From the IMG/VR virus record IMGVR_UViG_3300036770_004143, positions 62,001-126,000 of that record: a DNA stretch of 64,000 nt; one strand, given 5' to 3'. The position numbers and the translations under genes were made by a program. Below the pieces are notes generated by a model. It saw only the letters and a program-made list of their open reading frames with translations, did not search any database and was not told where the DNA came from. How positions within the stretch are numbered: the first letter of the stretch is position 1; every line of letters begins with the position of its first letter. Positions 29,864 through 58,535 of this stretch are shown here, piece after piece.

Positions 29864-31366
29864 ATGTCAATTCACTTATCTTATTTCAATAAAAATAATA
29901 CATTAATATCAAATTCCAAAATCAATACAGGTAGAAACCCTGTTATGGAATTATCCTATGGGGCAACAGACTATCTAATCCCAGCATATGGACCAACAAG
30001 ATTAATCTTTAATTTAAATCTCCAACCATTAATTGATAAAGTTAATGATAATATCATTTTTAGTGGTTCATTAAGTAGTGCAACACATACATTGGTAATG
30101 AAGAATTCGGCATCATTTGATGAATCATTGTTGAATGGTAAAATGCCATCCCAAAAAAGAAGAGCATCTTCATTTGATTTAAATCTATTTAGAATTCCTT
30201 TAAGCAGTGGTGACACTGGTTATACCCAATATTGGGATGAAGGTGTTGGCTATGATTATACCAATTATTCAAAAAACTTGAATTCAGGATCAGGTGCAAA
30301 ATATCCCCTTGTCATAAAAGATGATAATTCATTTGCCACAACCGCATCCAATTGGTTTAGTGGTAAGACCATAAGTGGCTGGACAGAATCAGGGATATAT
30401 AACAATAGAAATACAGGAAATGTTAATTATAGCGGATTAACCATTCTTGATACACAGCATTTTGAATTTGGGAATGAGGATATTTCTTTTGATATGACAA
30501 ATGAGATAAATGACATTCTAACAGGTTCTACAACAGACTATGCTGGTTGGGGTATTGCTTATCCACCTTCTTATGAAAATGCAACAGGGTTAACAGAAAG
30601 TTATTCTGTGGGCTTTTTTTCAAGGCATACACAAACATTCTATGAACCATATCTTATCACCACATATGATGATTTGGTAAAAGATGATAGAAATAATTTT
30701 GTGAAAAATAAAATAAATAAACTATATTTGTTTATTACAGATGATGGAAATTACATAAATTTGGATTCAAATCCTATTGTCAATATCATTGATAATGATG
30801 GTGATGTTATGAGTGATATAACTAATCTATCAACAAGATTGGTAACAAAAGGGGTTTATGAAGTTTCTATTCCAAATGTGTTTAGTGGATACACAGCACC
30901 AATGGTATTTATAGATGTATGGAGTGGATTAACCTTAAATGGAATAACCTTGCCAAATGTTGAAAATGAATTTGTATTATATGATATGAATAATAGAATT
31001 AAGACCGGAACAAAATCAACAGAAAATGAATCATATAATTTTGATTTTTATAATGTTATGCAAGGGGAGAAAATCCTTAACACAGATATTAGGAAGGTTG
31101 GGGTTATTATAAAGAAAGCATATAGCACAGATGAATTATTAACAGGGGTTAAAGCATATTATAGGGTTTATGTTAAGGAGGGTGAAACAGAGGTGCAAGT
31201 GCAAGATTGGACAGAAATAAATAGAAGCCCAAATGAATATTATTTTATATTTGACACAAGGGATAAAATCCCAAATAAATATTTTATTGATTTAAAAGTT
31301 CATATTGCTGGGGAAGTTTCAACGTATAAAAAACAATTAGCATTCTTTATTGTAAATAAAAAATAA
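29864..31366 (+). CDS. Putative virion structural protein (beta-rich)
   Basis: 500-aa ORF preceded by ATATTTAT motif; beta-strand-rich composition. Confidence 0.5.
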   Translation: MSIHLSYFNKNNTLISNSKINTGRNPVMELSYGATDYLIPAYGPTRLIFNLNLQPLIDKVNDNIIFSGSLSSATHTLVMKNSASFDESLLNGKMPSQKRRASSFDLNLFRIPLSSGDTGYTQYWDEGVGYDYTNYSKNLNSGSGAKYPLVIKDDNSFATTASNWFSGKTISGWTESGIYNNRNTGNVNYSGLTILDTQHFEFGNEDISFDMTNEINDILTGSTTDYAGWGIAYPPSYENATGLTESYSVGFFSRHTQTFYEPYLITTYDDLVKDDRNNFVKNKINKLYLFITDDGNYINLDSNPIVNIIDNDGDVMSDITNLSTRLVTKGVYEVSIPNVFSGYTAPMVFIDVWSGLTLNGITLPNVENEFVLYDMNNRIKTGTKSTENESYNFDFYNVMQGEKILNTDIRKVGVIIKKAYSTDELLTGVKAYYRVYVKEGETEVQVQDWTEINRSPNEYYFIFDTRDKIPNKYFIDLKVHIAGEVSTYKKQLAFFIVNKK

Positions 31367-32070
31367 TGGAAAAAGAAAAACTAAAAAGAATATTTAATTT
31401 CCTTGAAGAGAAAGGAGAACACATTATAGCATTACCAGTTAAGATTAAATTGGCTATGCCAATAGCAAAAGAAGATTTAAATGTTAAAGGTGATTTGAGT
31501 TTAAGACACGCAAATATAACCTCATTGCCAGAAGGTTTGAAAGTTGGTGGTGATTTATATTTAACTAATTCAAACATAACCTCATTACCAGAAGGTTTAA
31601 AAGTTGATGGTGATTTGATGTTAACCTTTTCAAAAATAATCTCATTACCAGATGATTTACAAGTTGGTGGTTCTTTGAATTTATCATATGCGGATATAAA
31701 CTCACTACCAAAAGGTTTGAAAGTTGGGGGTTCTTTGCATATAGAGGACACAAAAATAACCTCATTGCCAGAAGGATTGAAAGTTAATGGTAATTTGGGT
31801 TTAACTAATTCAAAGATAACCTCATTGCCAGAAGGATTGAAAGTTGGTGGTTATTTGACTTTATCACATACAAATGTAACCTCATTGCCAAAAGGATTGG
31901 AAGTTGGTAGAAATTTGTATTTAAGACATACAAATATAACCTCATTGCCAAAAGGTTTGAAAGTTTATGGAAAATTACTTATAGAAAATGCCCTATTAAG
32001 AAAATACACAGATGAAGAATTAAGAGAAATGATTAGACCTGGATTTATAGATGGAGAAATATTTAGATAA
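31366..32070 (+). CDS. LRR-like solenoid family member A1 (8 repeats)
   Basis: MEKEKLKRIFNFLEE cap, 20-aa SLPEGLKVGGDLYLTNSNIT repeats, KYTDEELREMIRPGFIDGEIFR cap. Confidence 0.85.
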   Translation: MEKEKLKRIFNFLEEKGEHIIALPVKIKLAMPIAKEDLNVKGDLSLRHANITSLPEGLKVGGDLYLTNSNITSLPEGLKVDGDLMLTFSKIISLPDDLQVGGSLNLSYADINSLPKGLKVGGSLHIEDTKITSLPEGLKVNGNLGLTNSKITSLPEGLKVGGYLTLSHTNVTSLPKGLEVGRNLYLRHTNITSLPKGLKVYGKLLIENALLRKYTDEELREMIRPGFIDGEIFR

Positions 32071-32666
32071 TGGAAAAAGAAACAATAAAAAGAATATTTG
32101 AGTTCCTTGAAGAAAAGGAAGGGAAAAAACATAAAGATAGAGATAACTTTATTTGGAAATTAAAATTTAATGAACCCCTAACAAAAGATGATTTAGTTGT
32201 TAATGGTGATTTGGATTTAACAGATTCAACATTAAAATCATTACCAGATAATTTGGAAGTTAAAGGTGGTATGCTTACTAGATTTTCAAGAATAGAAGAA
32301 TTACCAAAAGGGTTGAAAGTTGGTGGTACTTTGGATTTATCCTACTCTAGGATAAAAAACATACCAGATGATATTAAAATTGGTAATTCTTTGTATTTAC
32401 ACAATACAAAAATAACTTCACTACCAGAAGGATTGAAAGTTGGTGGTAGTTTAAGTTTAGTTTTTGCAGATATAGAATCATTACCAGAAGGGTTGAAAGT
32501 TGGTGATATTTTGCATTTACAGCGTTCAAAAATAACTTCATTACCAAAAGGGTTGGAAGTTAAAGGTGAGTTGATTATTAAAAATACAGCATTATTAGAA
32601 TACACAAATAATGAATTAAGAGAAATGATTAAACCTGGATTTATAAAAGGAGACATAATAAGATAA
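32070..32666 (+). CDS. LRR-like solenoid family member A2
   Basis: Same caps and repeats; TAATG coupling. Confidence 0.85.
   Translation: MEKETIKRIFEFLEEKEGKKHKDRDNFIWKLKFNEPLTKDDLVVNGDLDLTDSTLKSLPDNLEVKGGMLTRFSRIEELPKGLKVGGTLDLSYSRIKNIPDDIKIGNSLYLHNTKITSLPEGLKVGGSLSLVFADIESLPEGLKVGDILHLQRSKITSLPKGLEVKGELIIKNTALLEYTNNELREMIKPGFIKGDIIR
32124..32431 (+). repeat. 308-bp direct repeat, copy 1 (identical to 34321-34628)
   Basis: Base-by-base comparison by eye found no mismatch. Confidence 0.85.
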
Positions 32667-33064
32667 TGGAAAAAGAACAATTAAAAAGAATATTTGAGTT
32701 CCTTAAAACAAAGGAAAATCTTAACCAACCACTTGTGTGGAAGTTGAAAACTAATATGCCATTAAGAAAAGAAGATTTGGAAATTAATGGTGATTTGCAA
32801 TTATCAAATATAACATCATTGCCAGATGGATTGGAAGTTAAGGGTACTTTGTATTTAGACAACTCAAGTATAACTTCACTGCCAGAAGGATTGAAAGTTG
32901 GTGATGATTTAAGTCTATATAATACAAAAATAACCTTATTACCAAAAGGTTTGAAAGTTGGGCGTAGTTTATTTATTAGAAATACTCCATTAGAAGATTA
33001 CACTAATGAAGAATTAAGAGATATGATAAACCCTGGATTTATAAAAGGAGACATAATAAGATAA
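32666..33064 (+). CDS. LRR-like solenoid family member A3 (3 repeats)
   Basis: Same caps and repeats; flanked by 44-bp direct repeats. Confidence 0.85.
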   Translation: MEKEQLKRIFEFLKTKENLNQPLVWKLKTNMPLRKEDLEINGDLQLSNITSLPDGLEVKGTLYLDNSSITSLPEGLKVGDDLSLYNTKITLLPKGLKVGRSLFIRNTPLEDYTNEELRDMINPGFIKGDIIR

Positions 33065-33642
33065 TGGAAAAAGAAAAACTAAAAAGAATATTTGAGTTCC
33101 TTGAAGAAAAGGAAGGGCATAATGCACCATTTCGATGGAAAATATTAAATAATAAGCCAATAACCAAAGAAGAATTAAATGTTAAAGGTGATTTGGATTT
33201 AGAAAGAACAGAAATTACCTCATTACCAGAAGGGTTAAATGTTGATGGTAATTTATACCTTTATGAATCAAGCATAACTTCATTGCCAAAAGGATTGAAA
33301 GTTAGGGGTTTATTTTTAGCTAGTTCAAGAATAAAATCATTACCAGAAGATTTGAAAGTTGAAGGTTTGGATTTAGGTGGTACAGAAATAACTAAATTAC
33401 CAAAAGGTTTGAAAGTTGATTATAATTTAGTTTTAAAACATTCAAAAATAGAATCATTGCCAGAAGGATTAGAAGTTGGTGGCGATTTAAATTTAAGAAA
33501 TTGTAAAAACTTAAAGTCCTTACCAAAAGGCTTAATAGTTGGTGGAGATTTACATGTTTATGGAACATCCATATATAAACTTGATGATGATGAAATTGCA
33601 AAAATGATTCATCCTGGATACATAAATGGGAGCATATATTAA
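33064..33642 (+). CDS. LRR-like solenoid family member A4
   Basis: Same caps and repeats. Confidence 0.85.
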   Translation: MEKEKLKRIFEFLEEKEGHNAPFRWKILNNKPITKEELNVKGDLDLERTEITSLPEGLNVDGNLYLYESSITSLPKGLKVRGLFLASSRIKSLPEDLKVEGLDLGGTEITKLPKGLKVDYNLVLKHSKIESLPEGLEVGGDLNLRNCKNLKSLPKGLIVGGDLHVYGTSIYKLDDDEIAKMIHPGYINGSIY

Positions 33643-33646
33643 GATA

Positions 33647-34267
33647 ATGGAAATAAATACAATAAAAAAGATACTTGATTTTATTAAAAAGAAAGAAAAT
33701 AAAGTCCCCTCCTATATTAAGTTAAGAAAACTTAACCTAATGTATGACCTAGAAAATTATCCTGATGATGTTCAATTTACACATAATGATAATCTGTATT
33801 TATACGAAATGCCTATAAAAAAACTACCAAATAAATTTAATGTTAAGGGTTATTTGATGGTGAAAGATTGTAAAAATTTAAAAGAACTTTCAGGTGATTT
33901 ACGTGTTGAAGGTTGGGCAGATTTAGCAGGTTTAAATATAACAAAACTCCCAGATAAAATATATGTGGATGATTATTTAGATTTAGATTCTTGTGAAGAA
34001 TTAATAAAACTCCCAAGTGAATTATATGTTGGGGGTAGTTTAAATTTATCTGATTGTGTAAAAATAAAAGAACTTCCAGATAATTTATACGTTGGAGGTA
34101 ATTTTGGTATTATTTCTACACAAATAGAAGATTTTCCAAATAATTTATATGTTAGACGAGATATAGGCATAAGAAACACCCCCCTTGCCAAAAAATATAC
34201 AGATGAAGAAATAAGAAGTAATAAAAATTTAAATGGGGGAAAATTTGAAGGTAAAATATTTAGATAA
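33647..34267 (+). CDS. LRR-like solenoid family member A5 (divergent)
   Basis: MEINTIKKILDFIKK start at the AGATAATGGAAA junction; LPxxLYVGGSLNLSDC repeats; KYTDEEIR cap. Confidence 0.8.
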   Translation: MEINTIKKILDFIKKKENKVPSYIKLRKLNLMYDLENYPDDVQFTHNDNLYLYEMPIKKLPNKFNVKGYLMVKDCKNLKELSGDLRVEGWADLAGLNITKLPDKIYVDDYLDLDSCEELIKLPSELYVGGSLNLSDCVKIKELPDNLYVGGNFGIISTQIEDFPNNLYVRRDIGIRNTPLAKKYTDEEIRSNKNLNGGKFEGKIFR

Positions 34268-34806
34268 TGGAAAAAGAAACAATAAGAAAAATATTTGATT
34301 TTATTGAGAAGAAAGAAAACAAAAAACATAAAGATAGAGATAACTTTATTTGGAAATTAAAATTTAATGAACCCCTAACAAAAGATGATTTAGTTGTTAA
34401 TGGTGATTTGGATTTAACAGATTCAACATTAAAATCATTACCAGATAATTTGGAAGTTAAAGGTGGTATGCTTACTAGATTTTCAAGAATAGAAGAATTA
34501 CCAAAAGGGTTGAAAGTTGGTGGTACTTTGGATTTATCCTACTCTAGGATAAAAAACATACCAGATGATATTAAAATTGGTAATTCTTTGTATTTACACA
34601 ATACAAAAATAACTTCACTACCAGAAGGGTTATTCATTGGTAATTGGTTAGGAATAATGGATACACCAATAAATAAGTTACCAAAAGGGTTAATAGTTAA
34701 TGGCTACTTAAACATAAATAGTGGAAGTAGTTTAGCCAATTTTTCTAATGATGAATTAAGAGAAATGGTTAAACCTGGATATATAAAAGGAATAATTAAA
34801 ATGTAA
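34267..34806 (+). CDS. LRR-like solenoid family member A6
   Basis: Shares 308 identical bp with A2, different C-terminal repeats. Confidence 0.85.
   Translation: MEKETIRKIFDFIEKKENKKHKDRDNFIWKLKFNEPLTKDDLVVNGDLDLTDSTLKSLPDNLEVKGGMLTRFSRIEELPKGLKVGGTLDLSYSRIKNIPDDIKIGNSLYLHNTKITSLPEGLFIGNWLGIMDTPINKLPKGLIVNGYLNINSGSSLANFSNDELREMVKPGYIKGIIKM
34321..34628 (+). repeat. 308-bp direct repeat, copy 2
   Basis: Identical to 32124-32431. Confidence 0.85.
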
Positions 34807-37253: not shown

Positions 37254-39047
37254 TTATCTTAACTCTTGTAAGTCAAATGTTCTAACTCCATCAACTGTAA
37301 TTCTACCATAGAAACGGTTATTAACCAATTTTTTAGCATAACGAGTCATTATACCTTTGATAGGTGTGAAGTTGAATGGGTTATACATAGTTGGAGTTAA
37401 TTGTAAAGGTACATAAGGTGCATAGATATAACCTGTGTCAAGTAAAGATGTTCCTTTATGTCCCATCAAAATTTGGTTTGCTGGGAAGTAAGGATCACGA
37501 TATACTTGGTAACGACCAGCTAATGTACCTACTCTTTCAATACCCATGTTGTATTGGTCTTGCTCTGGTGAAGCATTTGATACATGGAAGTATTCCAAAT
37601 CATCAAAAACTGCACTTACTTCAGAAGAAACAACAATCCAGTTTGCACCACCTCTCAAAGTTGATTTGTGAATTTGTGCAGATACTTGGTTGATTGTTGT
37701 AATCAATGTTTGATTCCAATCTTTTTGAGTGTAAGGGATTGCATTTGTACCCAATCTCTTCCAACCATTGTAATCCCAACGTAAATTCCAAGCTGCACCT
37801 TTTCTAAGGTCACGAAGAATTTCTCTATCAATCTCTGCTGCAATTTGCTCTGACAATAAAGCAGTTAATTCTGCTTCAGCATCAATATTATGGAATGCAG
37901 CAACATCCTGTGCCATTTCTGGAGACCATTGAGCCCTTAACTTTCTTTCAGTTACAGAAACTGTAACAGATTGTAAGTCAAAAGAAACCTCACCAATCTT
38001 ATCTTCAAATTCTAAACTCTTGTAAATTCTATAAGTTGCACCAAATGATGAAGTAGATGTTCCACTAATTGCGGTTGTAAGGCCTGAATAACCATCTAAT
38101 GAATTTGAACCAACAGTTGCTGGTCTTAGTAAATCAACTTCAAGATAAACCACACCTTCTGGTGTTGATAAATCATTATATTGTCCACCACCTGTTAAAC
38201 TATCAGGGAATCCTGCTGTTTGAGTACTACCATATTGAACAAGCCCTTTTGCATACTTCTGTGTCACAACTCTAAATAATAATGGACTACCAGCTACTGT
38301 TGTTGCAGCTGAAAAAGGACCATCAGTTTTAGCAGTTATTGTTAAACTAGCCAAGAAACTTTCATTATCAATTGGATTACCATCAGCACCAATTAATTTA
38401 CCTTCACCTGTGCTTGAGAATCCAGTTAAAGCTATTATAACTTTTCTATACTCAGTTGCAGTAGTAATAGATGCATTTTCTAAATTACTACCATTCCAAA
38501 CAACTGTATTAACTCCAGCAGTAACTGCACTATATTGTCCTTTTGAATAATCATAAAGACCTTCTGGGTTTAAACCTGGCTCATTACCTTCATAGAACCT
38601 ATCATATAGATTTTTTCCACTACCATAACCAGAAGTAGGAGTTTGGTCACTTGGTACACCAGGTGCCCCATAAGGTGAATAATGAGCACCAGCAACATTA
38701 CCAGCATTTGCCTCTTGAATTTGTGGCACAAAGAAGAACAATTTACCAATAGGTAAGTTCATTGCTTGTACAGAAACAATATCATTAGCCAATAATTTAG
38801 AGAATACTCTCCTTACAATTGGGAAAACAACTGTTTCAAATGCACCAGTATCAGATGTACTGGCTGCTTCATTTATAAGATATGATGCTTGGTTTTCATA
38901 TAACTGTGCAACATTCTCTTTTAGGTGGCCTTTAAGACCTTCAAGGAATCCTAATTTATTCCATTTGCTAATAGTATCTTCTTTGATAACTTTTAGGTGT
39001 TTCAACCCAATATTACCAACAAGACCTGATTCTAATAATGCTCCCAT
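37254..39047 (-). CDS. Major capsid protein (T4 gp23-like)
   Basis: FPIVRRVF..DIVSVQAM, VTERKLRAQWSPEMAQD..HNIDAEAELT..EIDREI, YAPYVPL, KGIMTRYA. Confidence 0.95.
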   Translation of the reverse strand: MGALLESGLVGNIGLKHLKVIKEDTISKWNKLGFLEGLKGHLKENVAQLYENQASYLINEAASTSDTGAFETVVFPIVRRVFSKLLANDIVSVQAMNLPIGKLFFFVPQIQEANAGNVAGAHYSPYGAPGVPSDQTPTSGYGSGKNLYDRFYEGNEPGLNPEGLYDYSKGQYSAVTAGVNTVVWNGSNLENASITTATEYRKVIIALTGFSSTGEGKLIGADGNPIDNESFLASLTITAKTDGPFSAATTVAGSPLLFRVVTQKYAKGLVQYGSTQTAGFPDSLTGGGQYNDLSTPEGVVYLEVDLLRPATVGSNSLDGYSGLTTAISGTSTSSFGATYRIYKSLEFEDKIGEVSFDLQSVTVSVTERKLRAQWSPEMAQDVAAFHNIDAEAELTALLSEQIAAEIDREILRDLRKGAAWNLRWDYNGWKRLGTNAIPYTQKDWNQTLITTINQVSAQIHKSTLRGGANWIVVSSEVSAVFDDLEYFHVSNASPEQDQYNMGIERVGTLAGRYQVYRDPYFPANQILMGHKGTSLLDTGYIYAPYVPLQLTPTMYNPFNFTPIKGIMTRYAKKLVNNRFYGRITVDGVRTFDLQELR

Positions 39048-39077: not shown

Positions 39078-40703
39078 TTAACCTAATTTACCCATTAAAT
39101 CTTTCATCCTCAAAAATTGTGGATTTTCATAAGTTTTGGATTCAATCAAGTTAGCAGATGAACCTGTTGAGGCAACATTTGAAATCTTGCGGTTAACAGA
39201 TTCATTTAAAGACGTATTTGAATCTTTTGATAATTCGCTATTAATAGCATTGTATAGATTTTTTGATTCTTGTAATGATTGAATATTATCAAAACGTCTT
39301 AAAATGTTTATTTTTTCTTTTTTTGTTGTTGAATGTTCTGTGAACAATCTTGTTGCATATGCCAAATTAGCATTGAAAACAGCAACATCATTTAATTTCT
39401 CTCTAAATACATTTAATGATTTTTTATAATCACTATTCTTTTGTCTTAATTCCAAAACTTGGTTTTCAAGAGATTCTAAATTCAAATTTCTATTTGGTGT
39501 AATGCCTTTTTTAAGACCCCTACCTGCTTTGCTTCCCATACCATAAGTTCTTGATGCTTCTTTGGTTTCTTGTTTTCTACCAGGAGTTACTTTCTTCATC
39601 TTACCATCAACATTTGCGGCAGATTTGTCATAGTCAAACTTGGCTTTTCCTGTTCCCATTTTTTTAGGACCCTCTTTCATTTTTTCGTTAAAACCATTTT
39701 TAGCCATCTTATACTTAAATTTGGAAGCCTTTTTAGCCTCACCTAAATAGTCATATTTTTCAGATGTTTCACTTTTATTTGCCATACATCCATTATTTTC
39801 TAATACTTTCATTATTCTTCCAGCCTCTGTAATTCCATATTCTTCTATGAAATCACTAACTGAAAAATTATCACAATCAACTTCAATGTTGTTTAAATCA
39901 TCTTCCATATCCATATCAAAATCATCTTCCATATCCATATCATCTTCCATATCCATATCAAAATCATCTTCATCTTCCAAATCAATTTGCTCATCTACTT
40001 CAATTTCATAAATGATATTAGATTTTCTGGTATTAGTTCTTTCAAAAATTTTATCAATGGTTGATTGAGTGTCATCTTCATACATTTCACCCATTTCATC
40101 ATCATAATCACCATCCATTTCCATTTCATCTTCATCTTCAAAACCCATATCCATTTCATCTTCATCTTCAAAATCCATTTCCATTTCATCATCATCTTCA
40201 AAATCCATTTCCATTTCATCTTCAAAATCCTCACCACCAAACTCACTTATTTGTTCACCTAATCTTATTAAATATTCATTATCATCATCAGTTAAAGAGA
40301 TGTCCCCACCATCTTTGCTAACAATAATACCATCTTCATCACCCATTGCTTTAAATACTTTTAATAAGTCATGCTCTGAAGACCCCCTCATATCAATGAC
40401 ATCATCATCATCTTCCATATCAAACTCATCTTCATCTTCCATTTCATCATCCTCTATGTCCATATCCATATCCATATCTTCATCCTCCATATCATCCTCC
40501 ATATCTTCAACATCATCTTCCATATCTAAATCAGTGTCATCATCTTCAATATCTTCTTGCTCATTTAAAGATTCTTTAACTAATTCTTCGATTTCTTCCT
40601 TCATTGTTGAAGAAAGTATTCCTTTTGCGTTTTCTGCAAGCACATCTTCAATTTGTTTCATTTGAATTAGTGCTTCTTCTACTAAGTTTTTTTCAGATTG
40701 CAT
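39078..40703 (-). CDS. Prohead core/scaffold protein (gp22-like) with acidic Met-rich repeats
   Basis: Directly upstream of MCP; C-terminal LNDVAVFNANLAY..KKEKINILRRFD coiled coil; DMEDD repeats. Confidence 0.75.
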   Translation of the reverse strand: MQSEKNLVEEALIQMKQIEDVLAENAKGILSSTMKEEIEELVKESLNEQEDIEDDDTDLDMEDDVEDMEDDMEDEDMDMDMDIEDDEMEDEDEFDMEDDDDVIDMRGSSEHDLLKVFKAMGDEDGIIVSKDGGDISLTDDDNEYLIRLGEQISEFGGEDFEDEMEMDFEDDDEMEMDFEDEDEMDMGFEDEDEMEMDGDYDDEMGEMYEDDTQSTIDKIFERTNTRKSNIIYEIEVDEQIDLEDEDDFDMDMEDDMDMEDDFDMDMEDDLNNIEVDCDNFSVSDFIEEYGITEAGRIMKVLENNGCMANKSETSEKYDYLGEAKKASKFKYKMAKNGFNEKMKEGPKKMGTGKAKFDYDKSAANVDGKMKKVTPGRKQETKEASRTYGMGSKAGRGLKKGITPNRNLNLESLENQVLELRQKNSDYKKSLNVFREKLNDVAVFNANLAYATRLFTEHSTTKKEKINILRRFDNIQSLQESKNLYNAINSELSKDSNTSLNESVNRKISNVASTGSSANLIESKTYENPQFLRMKDLMGKLG

Positions 40704-40742
40704 AATTTTTTATTTATTTTTATTATAAATATACAGAAAAGC

Positions 40743-40832: not shown

Positions 40833-41042
40833 TTATTGGAAAACTTCATCAATTTTTGATTCTGACACAGCAGTTATTCTCCATTCTTGTGTGAAATTTT
40901 GATACTTTTCAGTTATCTTGGCTTCCACATCTGTTACAGAATAACCCTTCACCAATTTTTCTTCTCTTATCTTTTTTAATTTTCCAGTGTTTTCATCTGG
41001 TAAATTAAAAGTTAGTTTTGCAACAAAGAATTTTTCATCCAT
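40833..41042 (-). CDS. DUF4494-like small protein
   Basis: FFVAKL..KKIREEKLVKGYSVTDVEAKI..ITAVSESKIDEVF resembles the Bacteroidota DUF4494 pattern (from memory). Confidence 0.5.
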   Translation of the reverse strand: MDEKFFVAKLTFNLPDENTGKLKKIREEKLVKGYSVTDVEAKITEKYQNFTQEWRITAVSESKIDEVFQ

Positions 41043-41125: not shown

Positions 41126-41590
41126 TTAGTCATATATTCTACCTTTTATAAAACCTGGTTTTATCATTTCTCTTAATTGTCGTTTTGTATATTTTGTTAA
41201 ATCTGTTCCATGAATATATAAATCACCTCCAACTTCCAATCCTTTTGGTAGTGAGAATATACTTGAATATGCTACACTCAAACCACCCCCAACTATCAAA
41301 TCTTTTGGCAATGATTCAATTGCTGATTTATATAACATCAAATCACCACCAACTTCTAATCCTTCTGGTAGTGAGATTATTTTTGAACCTCTTAAAGATA
41401 AATCACCTCCAACTTTCAATCCTTCTGGTAATGAGGCTATATCTAAATATGAAAAGTCTAAATCACCTTTAACATTTAAATCATCTTCTATTAATGATAT
41501 ATTATTTATTAATTTCCATTTAAGTGGTAATCTATGTTCTCCCTTCTCTTCAAGGAACTCAAATATTCTTTTTAATTTCTCTTTTTCCAT
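41126..41590 (-). CDS. LRR-like solenoid family member B3
   Basis: MEKEKLKRIFEFLEE cap, LPEGLKVGGDL repeats, LREMIKPGFIKG cap. Confidence 0.85.
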   Translation of the reverse strand: MEKEKLKRIFEFLEEKGEHRLPLKWKLINNISLIEDDLNVKGDLDFSYLDIASLPEGLKVGGDLSLRGSKIISLPEGLEVGGDLMLYKSAIESLPKDLIVGGGLSVAYSSIFSLPKGLEVGGDLYIHGTDLTKYTKRQLREMIKPGFIKGRIYD

Positions 41591-41593
41591 TAT

Positions 41594-42184
41594 CTAATCT
41601 CTAACTATTGGGCCATCTATAAATCCAGGTTCAACCATTTTTCTTAATTGTCTATTTGAATATTTTTCTAATGGTGATCCAGAAATCTCCAAACCACCTT
41701 TAACTATCAAACCTTTTGGTAATGTTTCTATTTTTGTAAAGGATAAAACTAACTCCCCCACAATTTTAACACCTTGGGGTAATGATTTTATTGGACTATT
41801 AAATAAATTTAAATCGCCCTTAACAACCAATCCCTCTCCAATGGAAACTATTCTTTTTGCGTATAATTGTATGCTTTTGCCAACTTTTAATCCTTTTGGT
41901 AATGAGGTTATGGCTTCACAACCAATTATATTTAAGTCACCCCCAACTTGTAAATCATCTGGTAATGAGGCTATTTTTGAAAAGGTTAACATCAAATCAC
42001 CCTCAACTTTCAACCCATCTGGCAAGGAGGTTATTGTTGAATTTTCTAAATGTAAGTCACCTTTAAAATTTAACTCTTCGTTTGTTATTGGCATATTATT
42101 TTGATGTTTCCATAAAAATGGCGCATTATGCCCTTCCTTCTCTTCAAGAAAATCAAATATTTTTTTTAATTGATCTATATTCAC
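41594..42184 (-). CDS. LRR-like solenoid family member B2
   Basis: Same architecture; shares 57/59 bp with A1. Confidence 0.85.
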   Translation of the reverse strand: MNIDQLKKIFDFLEEKEGHNAPFLWKHQNNMPITNEELNFKGDLHLENSTITSLPDGLKVEGDLMLTFSKIASLPDDLQVGGDLNIIGCEAITSLPKGLKVGKSIQLYAKRIVSIGEGLVVKGDLNLFNSPIKSLPQGVKIVGELVLSFTKIETLPKGLIVKGGLEISGSPLEKYSNRQLRKMVEPGFIDGPIVRD

Positions 42185-42846
42185 GACCTATATATTTTAC
42201 CTTTTATAAATCCAGGTTTTATCATTTCTCTTAATTCATTATCTGAATATTTTTTTAATGGTGTTTTTGCTATATATATATGGTTGCCAACTTCCAATCC
42301 TTTTGGCAATGAAGTTATTTTTGTTTTAGTTAAAAACAAATCTGAACCAACTTTCAATTCTTCTGGTAATGAAATTAAATTTTTACAATTGTATAAACCC
42401 AAACCCCCTCCAACTTTAAATCCTTCTGGTAATGAAGTTATGTTTGTGTTGTGTAAATGCAAATTGCCAACAACTTTCAAATCTTCTGGTAATGAGGTTA
42501 TAGATGTTGACCCTAGGTTCAAATCACGACCAACTTTCAATCCTTTTGGTAATGAGGTTATTTTTGATTCATCTAAATATAAATCACCAATAACTTCCAA
42601 TCTTTCTGGTAATGAGGTTATGTTTGCGTATTTTAAACTTAAGTAACCATTAACTTTTAATCCTTCTGGTAATGAGGGTATATTTTTTTTAAAATCAAAA
42701 TCTAAGCTACCTTTAACATTTAAATCTTCTTTTGTTAATGGCTCATTAAGTGCAATTTTCCAAAGTAAATCTTCTTTTATGCTAGAAAATTTATTTTCTT
42801 TTCTTTCAAGGAAATCAAGTATTTTCTTTAATTTTTTTAGTTCCAT
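42181..42846 (-). CDS. LRR-like solenoid family member B1 (7 repeats)
   Basis: Same architecture; starts 1 nt after the prohead protease stop. Confidence 0.85.
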   Translation of the reverse strand: MELKKLKKILDFLERKENKFSSIKEDLLWKIALNEPLTKEDLNVKGSLDFDFKKNIPSLPEGLKVNGYLSLKYANITSLPERLEVIGDLYLDESKITSLPKGLKVGRDLNLGSTSITSLPEDLKVVGNLHLHNTNITSLPEGFKVGGGLGLYNCKNLISLPEELKVGSDLFLTKTKITSLPKGLEVGNHIYIAKTPLKKYSDNELREMIKPGFIKGKIYRS

Positions 42847-43549: not shown

Positions 43550-43586
43550 AATATATTTTAATATATAAATATTAAAATATTTTGTT

Positions 43587-44788: not shown

Positions 44789-44813
44789 ACTTCTTCTTTT
44801 TTTATAAATATTG

Positions 44814-53334: not shown

Positions 53335-53336
53335 AG

Positions 53337-54651: not shown

Positions 54652-54663
54652 CTTATTTTCATA

Positions 54664-54738: not shown

Positions 54739-54791
54739 AAACTATTGGATTAGTCCAAAATTTGTATGATATTTATAAAAAAACATAAGAT

Positions 54792-56804
54792 ATGAATGTT
54801 GACTATTTTGATGATGAAAAAACAACAAGAGGCAAGAAAAACACCTCTGGTTCAAAAACTCCAGTATTGGACAATTTTAGTAGGGACTTATCCAAATTGG
54901 CTGAGATGGGAAAATTGGATATGTCAATTGGTAGGGAGAAAGAGGTTAAGAGATTGGCTCAAATCTTATCAAGACGAAAAAAGAACAATCCATTAATCCT
55001 TGGTGATGCTGGGTGTGGTAAAACAAACTTAATTGAAGGTGTTGCATTGATGATTTCAAAAGGTGAGGGTCCACAAAATCTATTAAACAAAAGAATTGTA
55101 AATTTAGATTTAACCTCTGTTGTTGCTGGAACTAAATATAGGGGTCAGTTTGAGGAAAGAATGAAAGTAATTCTTGATGAATTGATTGCAAATCCAAATG
55201 TTGTTGTATTCATTGATGAAATACATACATTAATTGGGTCTGGAAACTCATCTAATGCTATGGATGGTGCAAATATATTCAAGCCAGCATTAGCATCTGG
55301 GGATATTCAATGCATTGGTGCAACCACATTTGATGAATTTAAAAAATCAATAGAGAAAGATGGGGCATTAGCAAGGAGATTTCAAAAAATCAAACTTGAA
55401 CAACCTTCAATAAGTGAAACAATTAAAATTGTTAAACAATCTATTGATAAGTATGAATCCTTCCACAAGGCATCATATAGTGATGAGGTTATTGATTTAT
55501 GTGTCAAGATGGCAGATAGATATATTAATGATAGAGCATTTCCTGATAAGGCTTTTGATGTTATTGATGAAGTTGGGGCAAAACTACAAGTTGAGGTTAA
55601 AATACCTGAATCAATTGTAAAATTAAAAGAAAAGATTAATGACTTAAAACAGGAAAAAACAAGAGTTGTTATAAACCAAGAATATGAATTGGCTGCTGAA
55701 ATTAGGGATAAAGAGTTAAAGTTATTAACAAAACTTGAATCTGAAACAAAAAAGTTTGAAGAGGATAAGTTAAAGAATAAGCGAAAGATAGATATTGAAG
55801 ATGTCTATTCTGTTGTTTCAATTATGACAAATATTCCTTTGGAACAAATGAATATTGATGAAAAGCAAAAACTAATAAATTTAGATAAAAAGATTAAGGA
55901 AAATCTTATTGGTCAAGACGCTGCTGTTGAATCTATTACAAGATCAATTAAAAGAAATAGACTTAACATTAAAGACCCAAATAGACCAGTTGGTAGTTTC
56001 ATATTTTTAGGATCCACAGGAGTTGGTAAAACACATTTAGCAAAACAATTAGCCAAACAATTATTTGGAAATGAGAAATCATTGATTAGGGTTGATATGA
56101 GTGAATACCAGGAAAAACACACCATATCAAGATTGATTGGTTCGCCTCCAGGCTATGTTGGTCATGATGAGGGTGGTCAATTGACTGAAAAAGTTAAGAA
56201 TAACCCATATTCAATTATCTTGTTTGATGAGATTGAAAAAGCCCATAAGGATGTATTTAACTTGTTATTGCAGATATTAGATGAAGGTCATTTAACTGAT
56301 AGTCTAGGTAAAACTGTCAATTTCAAAAACACAATCATCATTTTAACAACAAACTTGGGTATCAAAAAATTCCAAGACTTTGGAACTGGAATTAGTTTCA
56401 CATCATCCAAATATGGCAATGAAGTTGCTAAAAAAGAAATGCTAATGAAAGAATTGAAAAAGTTCTTCTCACCTGAATTCTTGAACCGTATTGATGATAC
56501 CATTGTATTTAACACATTGAATGATGAGAATGTTAAAAAGATAACTGAAATTGAACTTAACAAACTAATTACAAGATTAATAGAATCTAATTACATTGTT
56601 TCCTTTGATTCATCTGTTATTGATTTAATTAGCAAAGTTGGATTTGATGACACTTATGGAGCAAGACCAATCAAGAGAGCAATCCAGGATAAGATTGAGG
56701 ATTTAATATCTGATGAGGTTTTAAATGGTTTCATTAAAGAGAATGAACCTTACCACCTAGTGGTTGAAGATGAAAATGTTATAATTAAAAAGGGGGTCGC
56801 TTGA
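54792..56804 (+). CDS. Class I Clp/Hsp100 ATPase, ClpC-like, lacking the N-domain
   Basis: GDAGCGKT and FIDEIH (D1), UVR-like middle coil (QEYELAAEIRDKE), GSTGVGKT and FDEIEKAH (D2), GISF loop, YGARPIKR. Confidence 0.9.
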   Translation: MNVDYFDDEKTTRGKKNTSGSKTPVLDNFSRDLSKLAEMGKLDMSIGREKEVKRLAQILSRRKKNNPLILGDAGCGKTNLIEGVALMISKGEGPQNLLNKRIVNLDLTSVVAGTKYRGQFEERMKVILDELIANPNVVVFIDEIHTLIGSGNSSNAMDGANIFKPALASGDIQCIGATTFDEFKKSIEKDGALARRFQKIKLEQPSISETIKIVKQSIDKYESFHKASYSDEVIDLCVKMADRYINDRAFPDKAFDVIDEVGAKLQVEVKIPESIVKLKEKINDLKQEKTRVVINQEYELAAEIRDKELKLLTKLESETKKFEEDKLKNKRKIDIEDVYSVVSIMTNIPLEQMNIDEKQKLINLDKKIKENLIGQDAAVESITRSIKRNRLNIKDPNRPVGSFIFLGSTGVGKTHLAKQLAKQLFGNEKSLIRVDMSEYQEKHTISRLIGSPPGYVGHDEGGQLTEKVKNNPYSIILFDEIEKAHKDVFNLLLQILDEGHLTDSLGKTVNFKNTIIILTTNLGIKKFQDFGTGISFTSSKYGNEVAKKEMLMKELKKFFSPEFLNRIDDTIVFNTLNDENVKKITEIELNKLITRLIESNYIVSFDSSVIDLISKVGFDDTYGARPIKRAIQDKIEDLISDEVLNGFIKENEPYHLVVEDENVIIKKGVA

Positions 56805-56811
56805 CCCCCTT
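56790..56811. terminator. Bidirectional hairpin between convergent genes
   Basis: aagggggtc-gctt-gaccccctt overlapping the clpC stop codon. Confidence 0.7.
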
Positions 56812-56817
56812 CCTTTT

Positions 56818-57630
56818 TTACCTCTTTTCCCTAAAAGATGGTCTTATAACTGGTATATGTTTCTTTTCATATTTTTCATAACCTAGACTTGCAATCATTT
56901 CCCTCCCTATTTTAATCCCATTCTCCACATCTTCTAAAACAACATACTCATCTGGTGTATGATAATCATAATAACCAATGGATATGTTAAGGCAACTAAA
57001 ATCAAATAACTTCTTTAATGCATATACATCTGTATAAGGATGTGAGCCAAACCTGGGGGTTGTATTCTCTACTAATACACTGTTAATCTTATTGAAGAAC
57101 TCACTATCCCTATTAAATAAAGGAACACCAGATGAAATTTCAGTCACCATCCAATCAAAAGGGGCATCAAACTGTATGGCATATCCAACGTTTTTGAAGA
57201 ATTCTGGATCTGCTTTTAATGAACCAATACACCCAATTTCTTCTGATACAAAAAAAGCAGCCTTTAAAACTGGTAATTCTGTCAATAAAGTTAAACAGGC
57301 AAAAACACCAGCTTTATCATCACCCCCAATTCCAGTTGGTTGCCCAATCTTATTATAACCCTTATAAGCCTCTTTTAAGACACCTTTTGAATTTTCCCTT
57401 AGTTCAGTTCTAACATCTATATAAGTGTTGTTGTGGACTGTATCTGTGTGTGCTACAACACAAGGATAGGTTTCTGTTTCACCCTTTGTGCAATATATGT
57501 TGGACATCTTATCAACCTCATATGGTATATTATTCTTTTTTAGAAATTCACATATGTAATTAACTAATTTTAATTCCCTGTCACTATATGATGGAATTGA
57601 TAACACTTCTTTTAATAATTCTTTGTTCAT
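56818..57630 (-). CDS. Zn-dependent peptidase (M28/M42-like)
   Basis: VAHTDTVH, GGDDKAG, SEEIG, QFD, YHTPDE metal-ligand motifs. Confidence 0.8.
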   Translation of the reverse strand: MNKELLKEVLSIPSYSDRELKLVNYICEFLKKNNIPYEVDKMSNIYCTKGETETYPCVVAHTDTVHNNTYIDVRTELRENSKGVLKEAYKGYNKIGQPTGIGGDDKAGVFACLTLLTELPVLKAAFFVSEEIGCIGSLKADPEFFKNVGYAIQFDAPFDWMVTEISSGVPLFNRDSEFFNKINSVLVENTTPRFGSHPYTDVYALKKLFDFSCLNISIGYYDYHTPDEYVVLEDVENGIKIGREMIASLGYEKYEKKHIPVIRPSFREKR

Positions 57631-57654
57631 GTTTTTTTGTATAAATATAAGTGA

Positions 57655-58065
57655 TTAAATTGTTAAAAACTTAATTTCACCACCCTTTTCTTTTATCATA
57701 TCCTTGATTTCTTTGTATGAATATTTTTCAGATAGAGTTGTGTATTTTGCAAACATTGAGTGTGCTTTTAGATTTTTTGGAATTGAATCTATTTCTAAAG
57801 CCGTTAGGTATAAATCACCATCAATAGTTAAATTATCTGGGAGAGTTTTTATTTTTGTCAATCTTAAATCAAGATATCCTTTAACAGTAAAATTGTCTGG
57901 TAATCTTTTTACCCTTGCACCATATAAATCAAAATTATCATCATAAAATAAATCTTTATCATCTATTGAATCAAAATCATTGATTAATTTCCATGTTAGG
58001 GGTGTTCTTTTGTTATCTTTTCCTTCAAGGAATTCAAATATTCTTTTTAATACTTCTTTTTCCAT
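57655..58065 (-). CDS. LRR-like solenoid family member C2 (divergent, 3 repeats)
   Basis: MEKEVLKRIFEFLEG cap, LPDNFTVKGYLDL repeats. Confidence 0.8.
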   Translation of the reverse strand: MEKEVLKRIFEFLEGKDNKRTPLTWKLINDFDSIDDKDLFYDDNFDLYGARVKRLPDNFTVKGYLDLRLTKIKTLPDNLTIDGDLYLTALEIDSIPKNLKAHSMFAKYTTLSEKYSYKEIKDMIKEKGGEIKFLTI

Positions 58066-58535
58066 TATCTAATTATTTTTCCTTTTATAAATCCAGGTTT
58101 AACCATTTCCCTTAATTCATCATCTGAATATTTTGTTAATTTTGTATTACCTATAACCAAAAAAGATTCAACTTCCAAACCTTTTGGTAATGATGTTACT
58201 TTTGTAAATCTTAAATCCAAAGCACCACCAACTTTCAATCCTTCAGGTAATGAAGTTATTGAATCACAACCCAATAACCACAAAATACCACCAACTTTTA
58301 AGTCTTTTGGTAGTGAGGTTATATTAATAGAACCATTTAAATCCAAATCACCACCAACTTTTAAACCTTCTGGTAATGATTTCACTTTTGACCTTTCTAA
58401 ACTAAAATTACCTTTAATATTCAAATCTTTTTTTGTTAATGGTATATTATTTTCCCATTTCCATAAAAATGGTGCTCTATGTTCTTGATTATCTTCCAGG
58501 AATTGAAGTATTCTTTTTAATTGTTCTTTTTCCAT
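58065..58535 (-). CDS. LRR-like solenoid family member C1
   Basis: Same caps and repeats; TATTTATA motif 18 nt upstream. Confidence 0.85.
   Translation of the reverse strand: MEKEQLKRILQFLEDNQEHRAPFLWKWENNIPLTKKDLNIKGNFSLERSKVKSLPEGLKVGGDLDLNGSINITSLPKDLKVGGILWLLGCDSITSLPEGLKVGGALDLRFTKVTSLPKGLEVESFLVIGNTKLTKYSDDELREMVKPGFIKGKIIR

What the first reader, a model, noticed from the sequence alone, without database searches (positions are those of the whole stretch)
31366..58535. Eleven-member family of small LRR-like solenoids in three arrays (VLR-like repertoire)
Seen: arrays A (6 genes, 31366-34806, +), B (3 genes, 41126-42846, -) and C (2 genes, 57655-58535, -). All have an N-cap MEKExLKRIFEFLEE, 3-8 copies of a 20-aa unit SLPEGLKVGGxLxLxxxxIT and usually a C-cap KYTxxELREMIKPGFIKGxI. 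The scaffold positions are fixed while the GxLxLxxx strand positions vary freely. That is the design logic of lamprey VLRs and other LRR binders, where the strand face is the binding surface (established for LRRs in general). There is no signal peptide and no catalytic motif. Inference: a diversified phage repertoire of protein binders, such as inhibitors or decoys for host defence proteins.
Basis: partly seen in the sequence, partly recalled or inferred. Interest (0 to 1): 0.82.

Follow-up and report, generated by a model that had tools for sequence, protein, structure and literature searches.

The report
Phage multigene family of LRR binders
An uncultured giant T4-like phage spends about 9% of this window (at least 38 genes genome-wide) on a fast-changing family of small leucine-rich-repeat proteins whose predicted binding face is hypervariable, which looks like a repertoire of protein binders, but what they bind is still unknown.

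Summary
Eleven intact genes sit at the stated coordinates. All share a helical N-cap, 2-9 copies of a 20-residue unit and a C-cap, with no signal peptide and no catalytic domain. AlphaFold2 gives confident LRR solenoids (pLDDT 91-93). The closest solved relative is Vibrio FlrP, followed by the IpaH/SspH LRR domains.

The family is larger than reported. The same 270-kb contig carries at least 38 copies in six arrays, and related phages carry 20 or more.

Core positions are nearly fixed (omega 0.05). The four concave-strand x positions evolve at about the neutral rate (omega 1.13, CI 0.6-2.3). Whole genes have omega 0.5-0.7, against 0.06-0.12 for flanking genes.

Arrays differ between close relatives by gene gain, loss and reordering, and orthologues differ by whole repeats. 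Two paralogues share a 300-nt identical tract, which indicates recombination.

So a "diversifying binder repertoire" is supported as design logic. Positive selection is not proven, no target is known, and the VLR comparison is only an analogy. The N-cap variant occurs only in phages and is undescribed in the literature I could search.

Best reading: intracellular binders of host or competitor proteins, possibly virion-delivered. This is inferred, not shown.

The parts
31366..32070 (+). LRR family gene A1, 234 aa, 8-9 repeat units. It is translationally coupled to the upstream 500-aa gene, which ends at 31366.
   Evidence: (E 1e-100); Pfam DUF5649 27.8 bits, above its cutoff
32070..32666 (+). 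LRR family gene A2, 198 aa. It is a chimera: codons 21-120 are 100% nucleotide-identical to A6.
   Evidence: (D13)
32666..33064 (+). LRR family gene A3, 132 aa, 3 units
33064..33642 (+). LRR family gene A4, 192 aa
33647..34267 (+). LRR family gene A5, 206 aa and the most divergent member. The mechanical ORF starts at 33626, but the family alignment and the junction motif place the start at 33647.
   Evidence: D16; a near-identical metagenome protein is P0094
34267..34806 (+). LRR family gene A6, 179 aa. An orthologue is retained across the clade (77-95% aa).
41126..41590 (-). LRR family gene B3, 154 aa, last gene of the array in the prohead-protease operon
41594..42184 (-). LRR family gene B2, 196 aa, GTG start overlapping the stop of B1. 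An orthologue is kept across the clade (75-91% aa) with omega 0.5-0.7.
42181..42846 (-). LRR family gene B1, 221 aa, starting 2 nt after the prohead protease stop. AF2 model m72740ee8b36d.
   Evidence: (pLDDT 91.1)
57655..58065 (-). LRR family gene C2, 136 aa, 2-3 units, with a divergent C-cap
   Evidence: E 4e-45
58065..58535 (-). LRR family gene C1, 156 aa. AF2 model m46d302e7a0e1.
   Evidence: pLDDT 93.5
58554..58561 (-). Promoter-like motif TATTTATA (coding orientation) 19 nt upstream of array C. The same motif precedes the scaffold, protease and p234 head genes.
   Evidence: 12 of 35 occurrences lie within 60 nt upstream of a start codon
42848..43549 (-). Prohead core protease (T4 gp21 type, Peptidase_S77). 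It is the first gene of the operon that continues into array B.
29864..31366 (+). 500-aa protein (paralogue of 28341-29843) that always precedes array A in relatives. Some relatives of this protein carry CBM96.

Best explanation
The 11 genes belong to a phage-specific, massively expanded family of small soluble LRR solenoids, with at least 38 copies in this roughly 270-300 kb T4-like genome. Each protein has a helix-loop-helix N-cap, 2-18 coils of a 20-residue unit (S-L-P-E-G-L-K-V-G-G-x-L-x-L-x-x-T-x-I-T) and a small helical C-cap. The L/P/V/G positions build the solenoid core. The x positions flanking L12 and L14, which form the canonical concave LRR strand, together with positions 18 and 20, make an exposed hypervariable face rich in D, N, S, Y and R.

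The most likely function is intracellular protein binding. Each paralogue would use its own face to bind, and so sequester, block or re-route, a different host or competing-element protein during infection. Counter-defence or host take-over is the most plausible theme.

New specificities arise in the germline by four routes: (i) in-frame gain or loss of 60-nt units, (ii) tandem gene duplication and loss at fixed hot spots, helped by the conserved cap-coding DNA and TAATG stop/start junctions, (iii) segmental recombination or gene conversion between paralogues, and (iv) near-neutral or faster substitution on the face.

Shown: the anatomy, the predicted fold, family size, turnover, mosaicism and the omega contrast. 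Inferred: that the face binds proteins, that the targets are host or competitor proteins, and the cellular location.
For: Fold: AF2 pLDDT 91.1 and 93.5, pTM 0.83-0.84. Foldseek and HMM best hits are Vibrio FlrP 8z5u_0 (profile E 1.6e-40) and then the SspH1, IpaH and SlrP substrate-binding LRR domains.

No signal peptide or TM segment, and pI ranges from 5.6 to 9.2. No catalytic or defence-family domain.

Entropy and omega: core omega 0.05, scaffold 0.20 (0.12-0.30), concave positions 1.13 (0.60-2.29). Non-synonymous to synonymous codon changes are 95:19 at variable positions and 51:91 at scaffold positions, Fisher p = 8e-15. Whole-gene omega is 0.5-0.7, against 0.06-0.12 for the flanking protease, p69, p140 and p500b in the same phages.

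Turnover: two conserved insertion sites hold 2-13 genes in different relatives. The closest relative has 4 extra genes and a different order in array A, and one replaced plus two extra genes in array B. Orthologues of 366, 387, 407 and 449 aa differ by whole repeats. Genes A2 and A6 share a 300-nt identical tract.

Family size: at least 38 copies on one contig in six arrays. Some arrays lie next to RNA ligase, DNA polymerase and an SNF2 helicase.

In the temperate Edwardsiella phage Edno5, the single homologue sits in the early-left accessory operon between CI and exo/RecT. That is a typical place for host-directed accessory genes.
Against: No ligand is known for any member. Omega of about 1 fits relaxed constraint as well as diversifying selection, since the confidence interval includes values below 1. 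The only characterised relative, FlrP, is a periplasmic structural spacer, not an inhibitor. Arrays A and B are co-transcribed with structural or late-type genes, which is odd for inhibitors needed early unless they are packaged into the virion. Synonymous divergence of the LRR genes is 3-4 times lower than that of their neighbours. This is unexplained and could inflate omega.
Confidence: 0.5

Rival explanations
1. Packaged and injected proteins. Some or all family members are loaded into the prohead, as T4 internal proteins and Alt or the phiKZ-type ejection proteins are, and are delivered with the DNA. The conserved N-terminal helix would act as a capsid-targeting handle. This rival is compatible with a binder function and concerns delivery.
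For: Array B lies inside the head operon, between the gp21-type prohead protease and p69/scaffold, in every relative examined (more than 10 phages). It has no promoter of its own and is tightly coupled to the protease gene. Array C, the L009 array and the L039 operon are preceded by the same TATTTAT[AT] motif as the scaffold and protease genes. The N-terminal 15 residues form an amphipathic helix containing I-F-E and L-E-E, which resembles the T4 (L/I)xE cleavage motif (my own knowledge of T4 IPI-III), in 7 of 11 genes. The first AF2 run gave this helix low confidence (pLDDT 55-69).
Against: 27 of the 38 copies lie outside structural modules. The N-region is almost never attached to other cargo: 97 of 103 representative proteins of at least 90 aa carry LRR units, and the N-region is on no other ORF in the window or in 68 loci. 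This is unlike the modular T4 targeting sequence. With a deeper alignment the helix is modelled as part of the fold (pLDDT about 80). The TATTTATA motif also precedes non-structural genes (ClpC-like, M20), so it is not proven to be late-specific.
Confidence: 0.17
2. Virion-surface adhesins or fibre accessories. The LRR proteins would dock on a fibre or capsid protein through their conserved caps and widen host or substrate binding.
For: Array A always follows two 500-aa paralogues whose distant relatives carry CBM96 or dockerin modules, and it is translationally coupled to the second of them. Other large phages put LRR or beta-helix domains on predicted host-recognition fibres (Goslar, PMC13742148).
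Against: The p500 proteins have no identified function. Most arrays are not near fibre genes. 38 separate small monomeric-looking proteins are hard to fit on a virion. The Edno5 homologue lies in an early operon, not the tail module.
Confidence: 0.08
3. Substrate adaptors for proteolysis or unfolding. The variable face would capture a host protein, and a conserved cap would dock it to the phage ClpC-like AAA+ ATPase or a host protease. This would work like IpaH (LRR plus E3) or poxvirus ANK/F-box proteins.
For: Array C lies in a cluster made of a ClpC/ClpB-like ATPase (54792-56804), an M20/M42-like peptidase (56818-57630), the LRR pair and a tmRNA gene (58765-59186). The closest effector LRRs (IpaH, SspH, SlrP) are substrate-recognition modules of degradation machines.
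Against: The evidence is positional only and concerns 2 of 38 genes. The ATPase lacks an N-domain, and its ClpP-loop reads GISF rather than (V/I)GF. No degron-like or adaptor motif was identified.
Confidence: 0.07
4. No diversified ligand set. The family has one shared or generic role (structural, crowding or chaperone-like), or it is a selfishly amplifying repeat-gene family, and its surface simply drifts.
For: Omega at the face is statistically indistinguishable from 1. Repeat DNA and conserved cap DNA make amplification by unequal crossing-over easy. FlrP shows that this repeat type can serve as a simple spacer.
Against: All 11 genes, and nearly all of the roughly 230 non-redundant copies examined, are intact ORFs with preserved caps and core (omega 0.05). 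Particular paralogues (the 196-aa and 179-aa genes) are retained as orthologues across the clade. The family takes about 8-9% of coding capacity in a phage. Face composition is biased towards D, N, S, Y and R, with the abundant K, I and E under-represented.
Confidence: 0.13

Closest known systems
Vibrio FlrP (PDB 8z5u chain 0; BCB49735.1), within Pfam DUF5649-type repeats
   Same: It has the same 20-residue repeat subtype (..LPxGLxVxGxLxLxxTxIxx..). The profile match is E 1.6e-40, it is the best Foldseek hit (TM 0.79 by target), and it is a small beta-solenoid LRR of similar size.
   Different: FlrP has a Sec signal peptide and sits in the periplasm bound to the flagellar rod as a spacer. It lacks the phage N-cap and C-cap, is a single-copy cellular gene, and is neither hypervariable nor expanded.
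LRR domains of the type III effectors IpaH, SspH1/2 and SlrP (LPX-type, 20-22-residue bacterial LRR)
   Same: Short bacterial-type repeat with an L-P motif and a helical N-cap. The concave face is the substrate-binding surface. They are the next-best structural and sequence matches after FlrP.
   Different: The phage proteins have no NEL E3-ligase domain and no secretion signal. The matches are far below the family cutoffs (14-24 bits against 450-1243). In the phage unit, position 1 of the LRR consensus is Gly rather than Leu.
Lamprey and hagfish variable lymphocyte receptors
   Same: The design logic is the same: a capped LRR solenoid with a fixed scaffold, variable concave strand residues and a variable number of modules.
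   Different: VLRs have disulfide-knotted LRRNT/LRRCT caps, a signal peptide and a stalk, and they are diversified somatically by cassette copying. The phage proteins have 0-3 Cys, helical caps and no signal peptide, and they diversify in the germline. PDB profile E-values to VLRs are only 6e-5 to 0.1.
Repeat-protein multigene families of large eukaryotic viruses (poxvirus ANK/F-box host-range genes; mimivirus ANK, LRR and FNIP families)
   Same: A large viral genome devotes many tandem paralogues to a repeat scaffold with fast gene turnover. Copy number scales with genome size (PMC5753266 was listed but not read; the statement about scaling is from my own knowledge).
   Different: The scaffolds and hosts differ. 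As far as the searches here reach, no comparable expansion has been described in a bacteriophage.
T4 internal proteins IPI-III and the hypervariable ip locus (my own knowledge)
   Same: Small, polymorphic, non-essential-looking proteins that share a conserved N-terminal segment. Array B is encoded among T4-type head genes.
   Different: The T4 targeting sequence is modular and sits on unrelated cargos, and it ends in (L/I)xE. Here the N-region is tied to the LRR body, and the motif is missing in 3-4 of the 11 genes.

Membership tests
Leucine-rich repeat (LRR) superfamily | Tandem 20-30-residue units carrying the LxxLxLxx(N/C/T)xL core | tested here: met
   1006 units have L12 (91%), L14 (78%), T/S/C17 (91%) and I/L19 (84%). 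Consensus position 1 is Gly rather than Leu, with V8 adjacent.
Leucine-rich repeat (LRR) superfamily | Curved solenoid with one parallel strand per unit | tested here: met
   Prediction only. AF2 pLDDT 91-93 with periodic strands. Foldseek probability is 1.0 to many solved LRRs.
Leucine-rich repeat (LRR) superfamily | Match to curated Pfam LRR models at the gathering score | tested here: not met
   LRR_1, LRR_4, LRR_8 and LRR_14 score 9-17 bits against cutoffs of 20-40. The family is too divergent for these models.
Pfam DUF5649 / FlrP-type repeats | Profile match above the cutoff | tested here: inconclusive
   Gene A1 scores 27.8 bits against a cutoff of 25. None of the other nine genes scanned is listed for DUF5649 at E <= 1 (C1 was not scanned). 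The family profile hits FlrP at E 1.6e-40, a value inflated by the repeats.
Pfam DUF5649 / FlrP-type repeats | Sec signal peptide and periplasmic flagellar-rod binding (FlrP) | tested here: not met
   The N-termini are hydrophilic, with KD(15) at or below 0.5 in 10 of 11, and form an amphipathic helix.
IpaH/SspH/SlrP NEL effectors | C-terminal NEL E3-ligase domain with a catalytic Cys | tested here: not met
   The proteins are 132-234 aa and end in a 25-aa cap. There is no NEL hit in Pfam or NCBIfam.
Variable lymphocyte receptors | Cys-knot LRRNT and LRRCT caps, a signal peptide, and an incomplete germline gene flanked by donor cassettes | tested here: not met
   There are 0-3 Cys per protein, the caps are helical, and all genes are complete ORFs.
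T4-type internal proteins with a capsid-targeting sequence | Short N-terminal leader ending in (L/I)xE and shared by unrelated cargos | tested here: inconclusive
   The motif is present in 7 of 11 genes. The leader is found on non-LRR bodies in only 4-6 of 103 database representatives, some of which look like frameshifts.
T4-type internal proteins with a capsid-targeting sequence | Presence in the mature capsid and cleavage by the prohead protease | not testable with these tools
   This needs virion proteomics. Only the position in the protease operon is known.
Diversity-generating retroelement (DGR) targets | A template/variable repeat pair with adenine-specific differences, plus a reverse transcriptase | tested here: not met
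   The only long near-identical repeat is the A2/A6 coding tract. The other repeats are the 60-nt units and the cap DNA. Variation is spread over all units. A reverse-transcriptase search of every ORF was not done.
Known anti-phage defence or anti-defence families | Match to PADLOC models | tested here: not met
   No meaningful hit for the 10 members scanned (C2 was not scanned).

The most novel reading that the evidence does not exclude
A giant phage carries a germline 'repertoire' of about 40 LRR binders. Their specificities are continually reshuffled by repeat indels, gene turnover and inter-paralogue recombination. Each would neutralise a different host immunity or physiology protein. This would be a counter-immune system built on the same scaffold logic that jawless vertebrates and plants use for immune recognition. 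Part of it may be loaded into the capsid through the head operon and injected ahead of gene expression.
Probability: 0.25. Interest if true: 0.9.

Novelty: new variant of a known kind. Interest (0 to 1): 0.68.

Why it matters
If these are specific binders, this family would be the first large, naturally diversified binder repertoire described in bacteriophages. It takes 8-9% of a roughly 270-300 kb genome, which implies strong selection. It would give a ready-made set of probes for finding the host proteins, possibly defence systems of an uncultured and probably Bacteroidota host, that matter most to a giant phage. The scaffold is small, free of Cys-knot caps (0-3 Cys per protein) and tolerant of changes in repeat number, which also makes it interesting for protein engineering. 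Even without a function, it documents a mode of phage genome evolution (tandem repeat-protein gene families at fixed hot spots, including inside the normally rigid T4-type head module) that is otherwise known from giant eukaryotic viruses.

Tried and rejected
1. Capsid-targeting signal. I profiled the N-terminal 45 residues against 1.84 billion representative proteins and against all ORFs of the window and 68 loci. The N-region is essentially always attached to an LRR body, so it is not a demonstrably modular signal. A deeper-MSA AF2 run raised its confidence to about 80. I kept this only as a minority rival.

2. Positive selection. NG86 on 38 independent close pairs gives omega 1.13 (0.60-2.29) at the concave positions. 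This is not significant, so I do not claim it.

3. Near relatives among cultured phages. There are none at the DNA level. By protein, only one homologue was found, in Edwardsiella phage Edno5.

4. Cellular homologues of the capped form. None were found in 185,579 species genomes. The bare repeat core occurs sporadically in diverse bacteria and one archaeal MAG, and it is fused to an unknown C-domain or to PcfJ in some bacteria and phages.

5. Literature searches for phage LRR multigene families, DUF5649 and PcfJ gave nothing relevant. The PcfJ search was swamped by C. elegans pCFJ plasmids.

6. PADLOC and NCBIfam gave no family assignment.

7. T4-type late promoter TATAAATA. The enriched motif is its complement, TATTTATA, in coding orientation. 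It also precedes non-structural genes, so timing cannot be assigned.

Full report
**Observation**

- six head-to-tail on the + strand (31366-34806)
- three on the - strand (41126-42846)
- two on the - strand (57655-58535)

They align end to end (A1). The shared parts are an N-terminal MEKExLKRIFEFLEEKE segment (M1, I9 and F12 invariant), a second short conserved stretch (..WKL.N..PLT..DL), a variable number of 20-residue units, and the tail ..KY(T/S)xxELREMIKPGFIKGxI.

A family HMM recovers just these 11 ORFs from all 324 ORFs of the window (E 1e-45 to 1e-100). The next best ORF has E 0.14.

Tandem Repeats Finder and the repeat finder see the 60-nt periodicity independently. They also show that genes abut through a conserved ..AGATAATGG.. 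junction with a TAATG stop/start overlap.

Gene 5 probably starts at 33647 rather than 33626.

The 11 genes occupy 6,043 nt, which is 9.4% of the window.

**What the proteins are**

Curated profile libraries barely recognise them. Pfam DUF5649 is above its cutoff for gene A1 only. The classical LRR models are sub-threshold. PHROG 21719 (function unknown) matches weakly. NCBIfam gives far-sub-threshold hits to the LRR parts of type III effectors. PADLOC gives nothing.

AlphaFold2 with family alignments gives confident models:
- 221-aa protein: pLDDT 91.1, pTM 0.83
- 156-aa protein: pLDDT 93.5, pTM 0.84

The models show helix 3-15/17, helix 23-28/32, then one short-strand pair per 20-residue coil, then two short helices and a terminal strand.

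In both Foldseek runs against the PDB, 8z5u chain 0 is the top hit. In the first run SspH1 and IpaH LRR domains follow with probability about 1.0. In the second run those matches are weak (probability mostly at or below 0.5).

A family profile hits 8z5u chain 0 at E 1.6e-40, followed by SlrP, SspH1 and designed or VLR-derived repebodies. 8z5u chain 0 is Vibrio FlrP, a 21.5-kDa periplasmic LRR beta-solenoid found bound to the polar flagellar rod (bioRxiv 10.64898/2025.12.04.692373).

The class is the short bacterial 20-residue type, not the VLR type.

None of the 11 has a hydrophobic N-terminus or a TM segment. pI ranges from 5.6 to 9.2, and they have 0-3 cysteines.

**Genome context**

The window is part of a distant T4-like myovirus with about 30% G+C. 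On the - strand it carries the large terminase, a gp20-type portal, a gp21-type prohead protease, an acidic scaffold-like protein and a gp23-type capsid protein.

It corresponds to IMG/VR contig 3300036770_004143 (270,075 bp), positions about 62001-126000.

The nearest cultured capsid proteins are only 41-42% identical (Flavobacterium phage immuto and Microcystis phage Mel-JY01).

Array B lies between the prohead protease and a 69-aa DUF4494 protein that precedes the scaffold gene. It starts 2 nt after the protease stop and has no promoter-like motif of its own. The unit ends in a hairpin terminator after p69.

Array A is coupled to the second of two 500-aa paralogues of unknown function. Some relatives of these carry CBM96.

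Array C follows an M20/M42-like peptidase gene and lies between a ClpC/ClpB-like ATPase gene and a tmRNA gene.

**Family size and distribution**

The same contig holds three more arrays outside the window:
- 2+10 genes next to RNA ligase, a PfkB-like kinase and a metallophosphoesterase
- 7 genes near an M12 peptidase
- 8 genes between DNA polymerase and an SNF2 helicase

This gives at least 38 paralogues per genome.

Profile searches find at least 2000 clusters at 90% identity in metagenomes, nearly all unnamed. In IMG/VR, 289 stretches encode a relative of the family. ESM Atlas neighbours are 85-100% viral. BFVD holds 'Leucine-rich repeat [uncultured Caudovirales phage]' models at 40-42% identity.

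The version with this N-cap is narrow. Only 157 representatives at 50% identity exist among 1.84 billion proteins. All are at most 240 aa, with the match at residue 1. None occurs in 185,579 bacterial and archaeal species genomes.

The bare repeat core occurs sporadically in very diverse bacteria and one archaeal MAG. In bacteria and other phages it is fused to an unknown ~150-aa C-domain or to a PcfJ-like domain.

The only homologue in a cultured phage is in temperate Edwardsiella phage Edno5. It sits in the early-left accessory operon between CI and exo/RecT.

**Variation**

From 231 non-redundant family genes I extracted 1006 in-register units. Spacing between units is 20 residues in 710 cases and 21 in 204.

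- Low entropy: 0.2-0.6 bit at L2, P3, L6, V8 and L12, and 1.0 at L14.
- High entropy: 3.2-3.8 bits at positions 11, 13, 15 and 16, 3.3 at position 18, and 2.8 at position 20.

Positions 11, 13, 15 and 16 are dominated by D, N, S, Y, G and R, rather than the K, I and E that an AT-rich genome favours.

Nei-Gojobori estimates on 38 independent close pairs (85-99.5% nt identity) are as follows:

| Position class | omega | 95% bootstrap |
|---|---|---|
| Core L/P/V positions | 0.05 | not computed |
| All scaffold positions | 0.20 | 0.12-0.30 |
| Six variable positions | 1.02 | 0.60-1.91 |
| Four canonical concave x positions | 1.13 | 0.60-2.29 |

Codon differences (non-synonymous : synonymous) are 95:19 at variable positions and 51:91 at scaffold positions (p = 8e-15).

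Within orthologue groups, whole-gene omega is 0.5-0.7. The flanking protease, p69, p146, p140, p500b and p122 have omega 0.06-0.12 in the same phages.

The face is therefore not under detectable purifying selection. Positive selection is not demonstrated either.

An oddity remains: the dS of the 196-aa LRR gene is 3-4 times lower than that of its immediate neighbours for the same phage pairs.

**Turnover and recombination**

In a clade of relatives (capsid 79-95% identical, protease 88-99%) the same two sites are always occupied, but with different gene sets. Site A holds 6-13 genes and site B holds 2-5.

The closest relative keeps all six array-A orthologues (88-99% aa). It also has four extra genes and a different order. 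In array B one gene is replaced (51% identity) and two are added.

More distant relatives retain only the 179-aa and 196-aa genes as recognisable orthologues.

One site-B gene occurs as 366, 387, 407 and 449 aa versions that differ by whole units.

Genes A2 and A6 are chimeric relatives. Codons 21-120 are 300/300 nt identical, while the flanks are 55-67% identical. In the closest relative the same tract is 94% identical, and in a more distant relative the two genes are unrelated.

The diversity is therefore generated in the germline by unit indels, tandem duplication and loss, and inter-paralogue recombination.

**Mechanism**

The best-supported reading is a repertoire of soluble intracellular binding modules that use the variable concave face. 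The fold, the family's dynamics and the lack of any catalytic or export feature are shown. Binding, and the identity of targets (host defence or physiology proteins, or competitor elements), are inferred by analogy with LRR domains in general and with the IpaH/SspH substrate-recognition domains.

I tested whether the conserved N-cap is a capsid-targeting signal, because array B sits in the protease operon. An (L/I)xE motif is present in 7 of 11 genes. However, the N-region is almost never found on other cargo. It is modelled as part of the fold when the alignment is deeper. Most arrays also lie outside structural modules. I keep delivery by the virion as a minority rival (0.17).

A TATTTATA motif is strongly enriched just upstream of start codons. 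It precedes the scaffold, protease and p234 genes and array C, and variants of it precede two arrays outside the window. It also precedes non-structural genes, so expression timing remains open.

The other rivals are surface adhesins, adaptors for the neighbouring ClpC-like ATPase, and a generic or selfish role. They are listed with their tests in the rival explanations.

**Novelty**

The fold and the repeat subtype are known. Individual phage LRR proteins are annotated in databases.

The capped family is unnamed. I found no description of a tandem LRR multigene expansion in a bacteriophage. The nearest parallels are the repeat-protein gene families of poxviruses and giant amoebal viruses.

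I rate this a new variant of a known kind, with interest 0.68. The anatomy and dynamics are striking and well supported, but the function is unproven.

Noticed in passing
window 58765-59186 (+): The phage encodes a full-length tmRNA gene. ARAGORN reads the tag peptide as GNTLETLATLGLVREDAVVAA. Rfam RF00023 scores 87 bits against a gathering score of 47. It lies directly next to LRR array C.
   Followed up: partly
window 54792-56804 (+) and 56818-57630 (-): A two-ring ClpC/ClpB/ClpA-like AAA+ ATPase without an N-domain, whose ClpP-loop region reads GISF instead of (V/I)GF. It is followed by an M20/M42-like peptidase homologue. Together with the tmRNA gene they form a protein-quality-control-like cluster around array C.
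   Followed up: partly
window 4067-7753 (-) and 8172-12476 (-): Two very large paralogous ORFs (1228 and 1434 aa) with about 40% G+C, against 30% for the rest of the window. They contain long Gly-rich arrays with 18-nt periodicity (129 repeat copies) and match PHROG 2295 and 15511 (function unknown). They are probably fibre-like structural proteins.
   Followed up: partly
window-wide; e.g. 40724-40731, 43564-43571, 44803-44810, 54770-54777, 57640-57647, 58554-58561, 59945-59952: The 8-mer TATTTATA (in coding orientation) occurs 35 times against about 15 expected. Twelve occurrences lie within 60 nt upstream of a start codon. It is a candidate phage promoter element.
   Followed up: partly
window upstream of 35438, 35933, 59328 (+) and 54592 (-): TAnnTTTG boxes, which are the Bacteroidetes-type -7 promoter consensus (my own knowledge), occur upstream of these genes. 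Other hints point the same way: a DUF4494 protein (40833-41042), about 30% G+C, and the nearest cultured capsid being from a Flavobacterium phage. Together they hint at a Bacteroidota host.
   Followed up: partly
window 41594-42184 compared with 42848-43549 and 40833-41042, across loci L023, L029, L040 and L061: For the same phage pairs, the LRR gene has 3-4 times lower synonymous divergence than the protease and p69 genes on either side, but twice the non-synonymous divergence. Possible causes are recent inter-phage exchange of LRR genes or synonymous constraint. This is unexplained.
   Followed up: partly
window 39078-40703 (-): A scaffold-like 541-aa protein that is extremely rich in D, E and M, with 12-30-nt periodic repeats. 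The 597-aa gp23-type capsid protein (37254-39047) matches the Pfam Gp23 model only from residue 325 onward.
   Followed up: no
window 31347-31751 (-), 32342-32680 (-), 42170-42646 (+), 57704-57946 (+): Long antisense ORFs (80-158 aa) run through the LRR genes, with translations such as PFGNEVIF... They are a by-product of the stop-free reverse complement of the repeat unit and not evidence of genes.
   Followed up: yes
L060:9239-10798; L051:6673-8082; proteins P0099, P0001, P0004, P0026: In other phages and in gut and rumen bacteria, the same repeat core is fused to a PcfJ-like domain at the N-terminus, or to an unannotated ~150-aa C-terminal domain (..YRVITGAC..GT..F..). P0099 sits next to MazE/PIN toxin-antitoxin genes in a bacterial chromosome.
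   Followed up: partly
window 28341-29843 and 29864-31366 (+): Two tandem 500-aa paralogues found only in phages, with no family assignment. Atlas neighbours include clusters carrying CBM96 or dockerin. They always precede LRR array A, and the first copy is more variable between relatives (62-77%) than the second (84-93%).
   Followed up: partly
window 15172-22262 (+) and 2223-3473 (-): Auxiliary genes are interspersed before the putative structural block: two glycosyltransferases, a 3'-5' exonuclease, a dUTPase and a PhoH-like ATPase.
   Followed up: no
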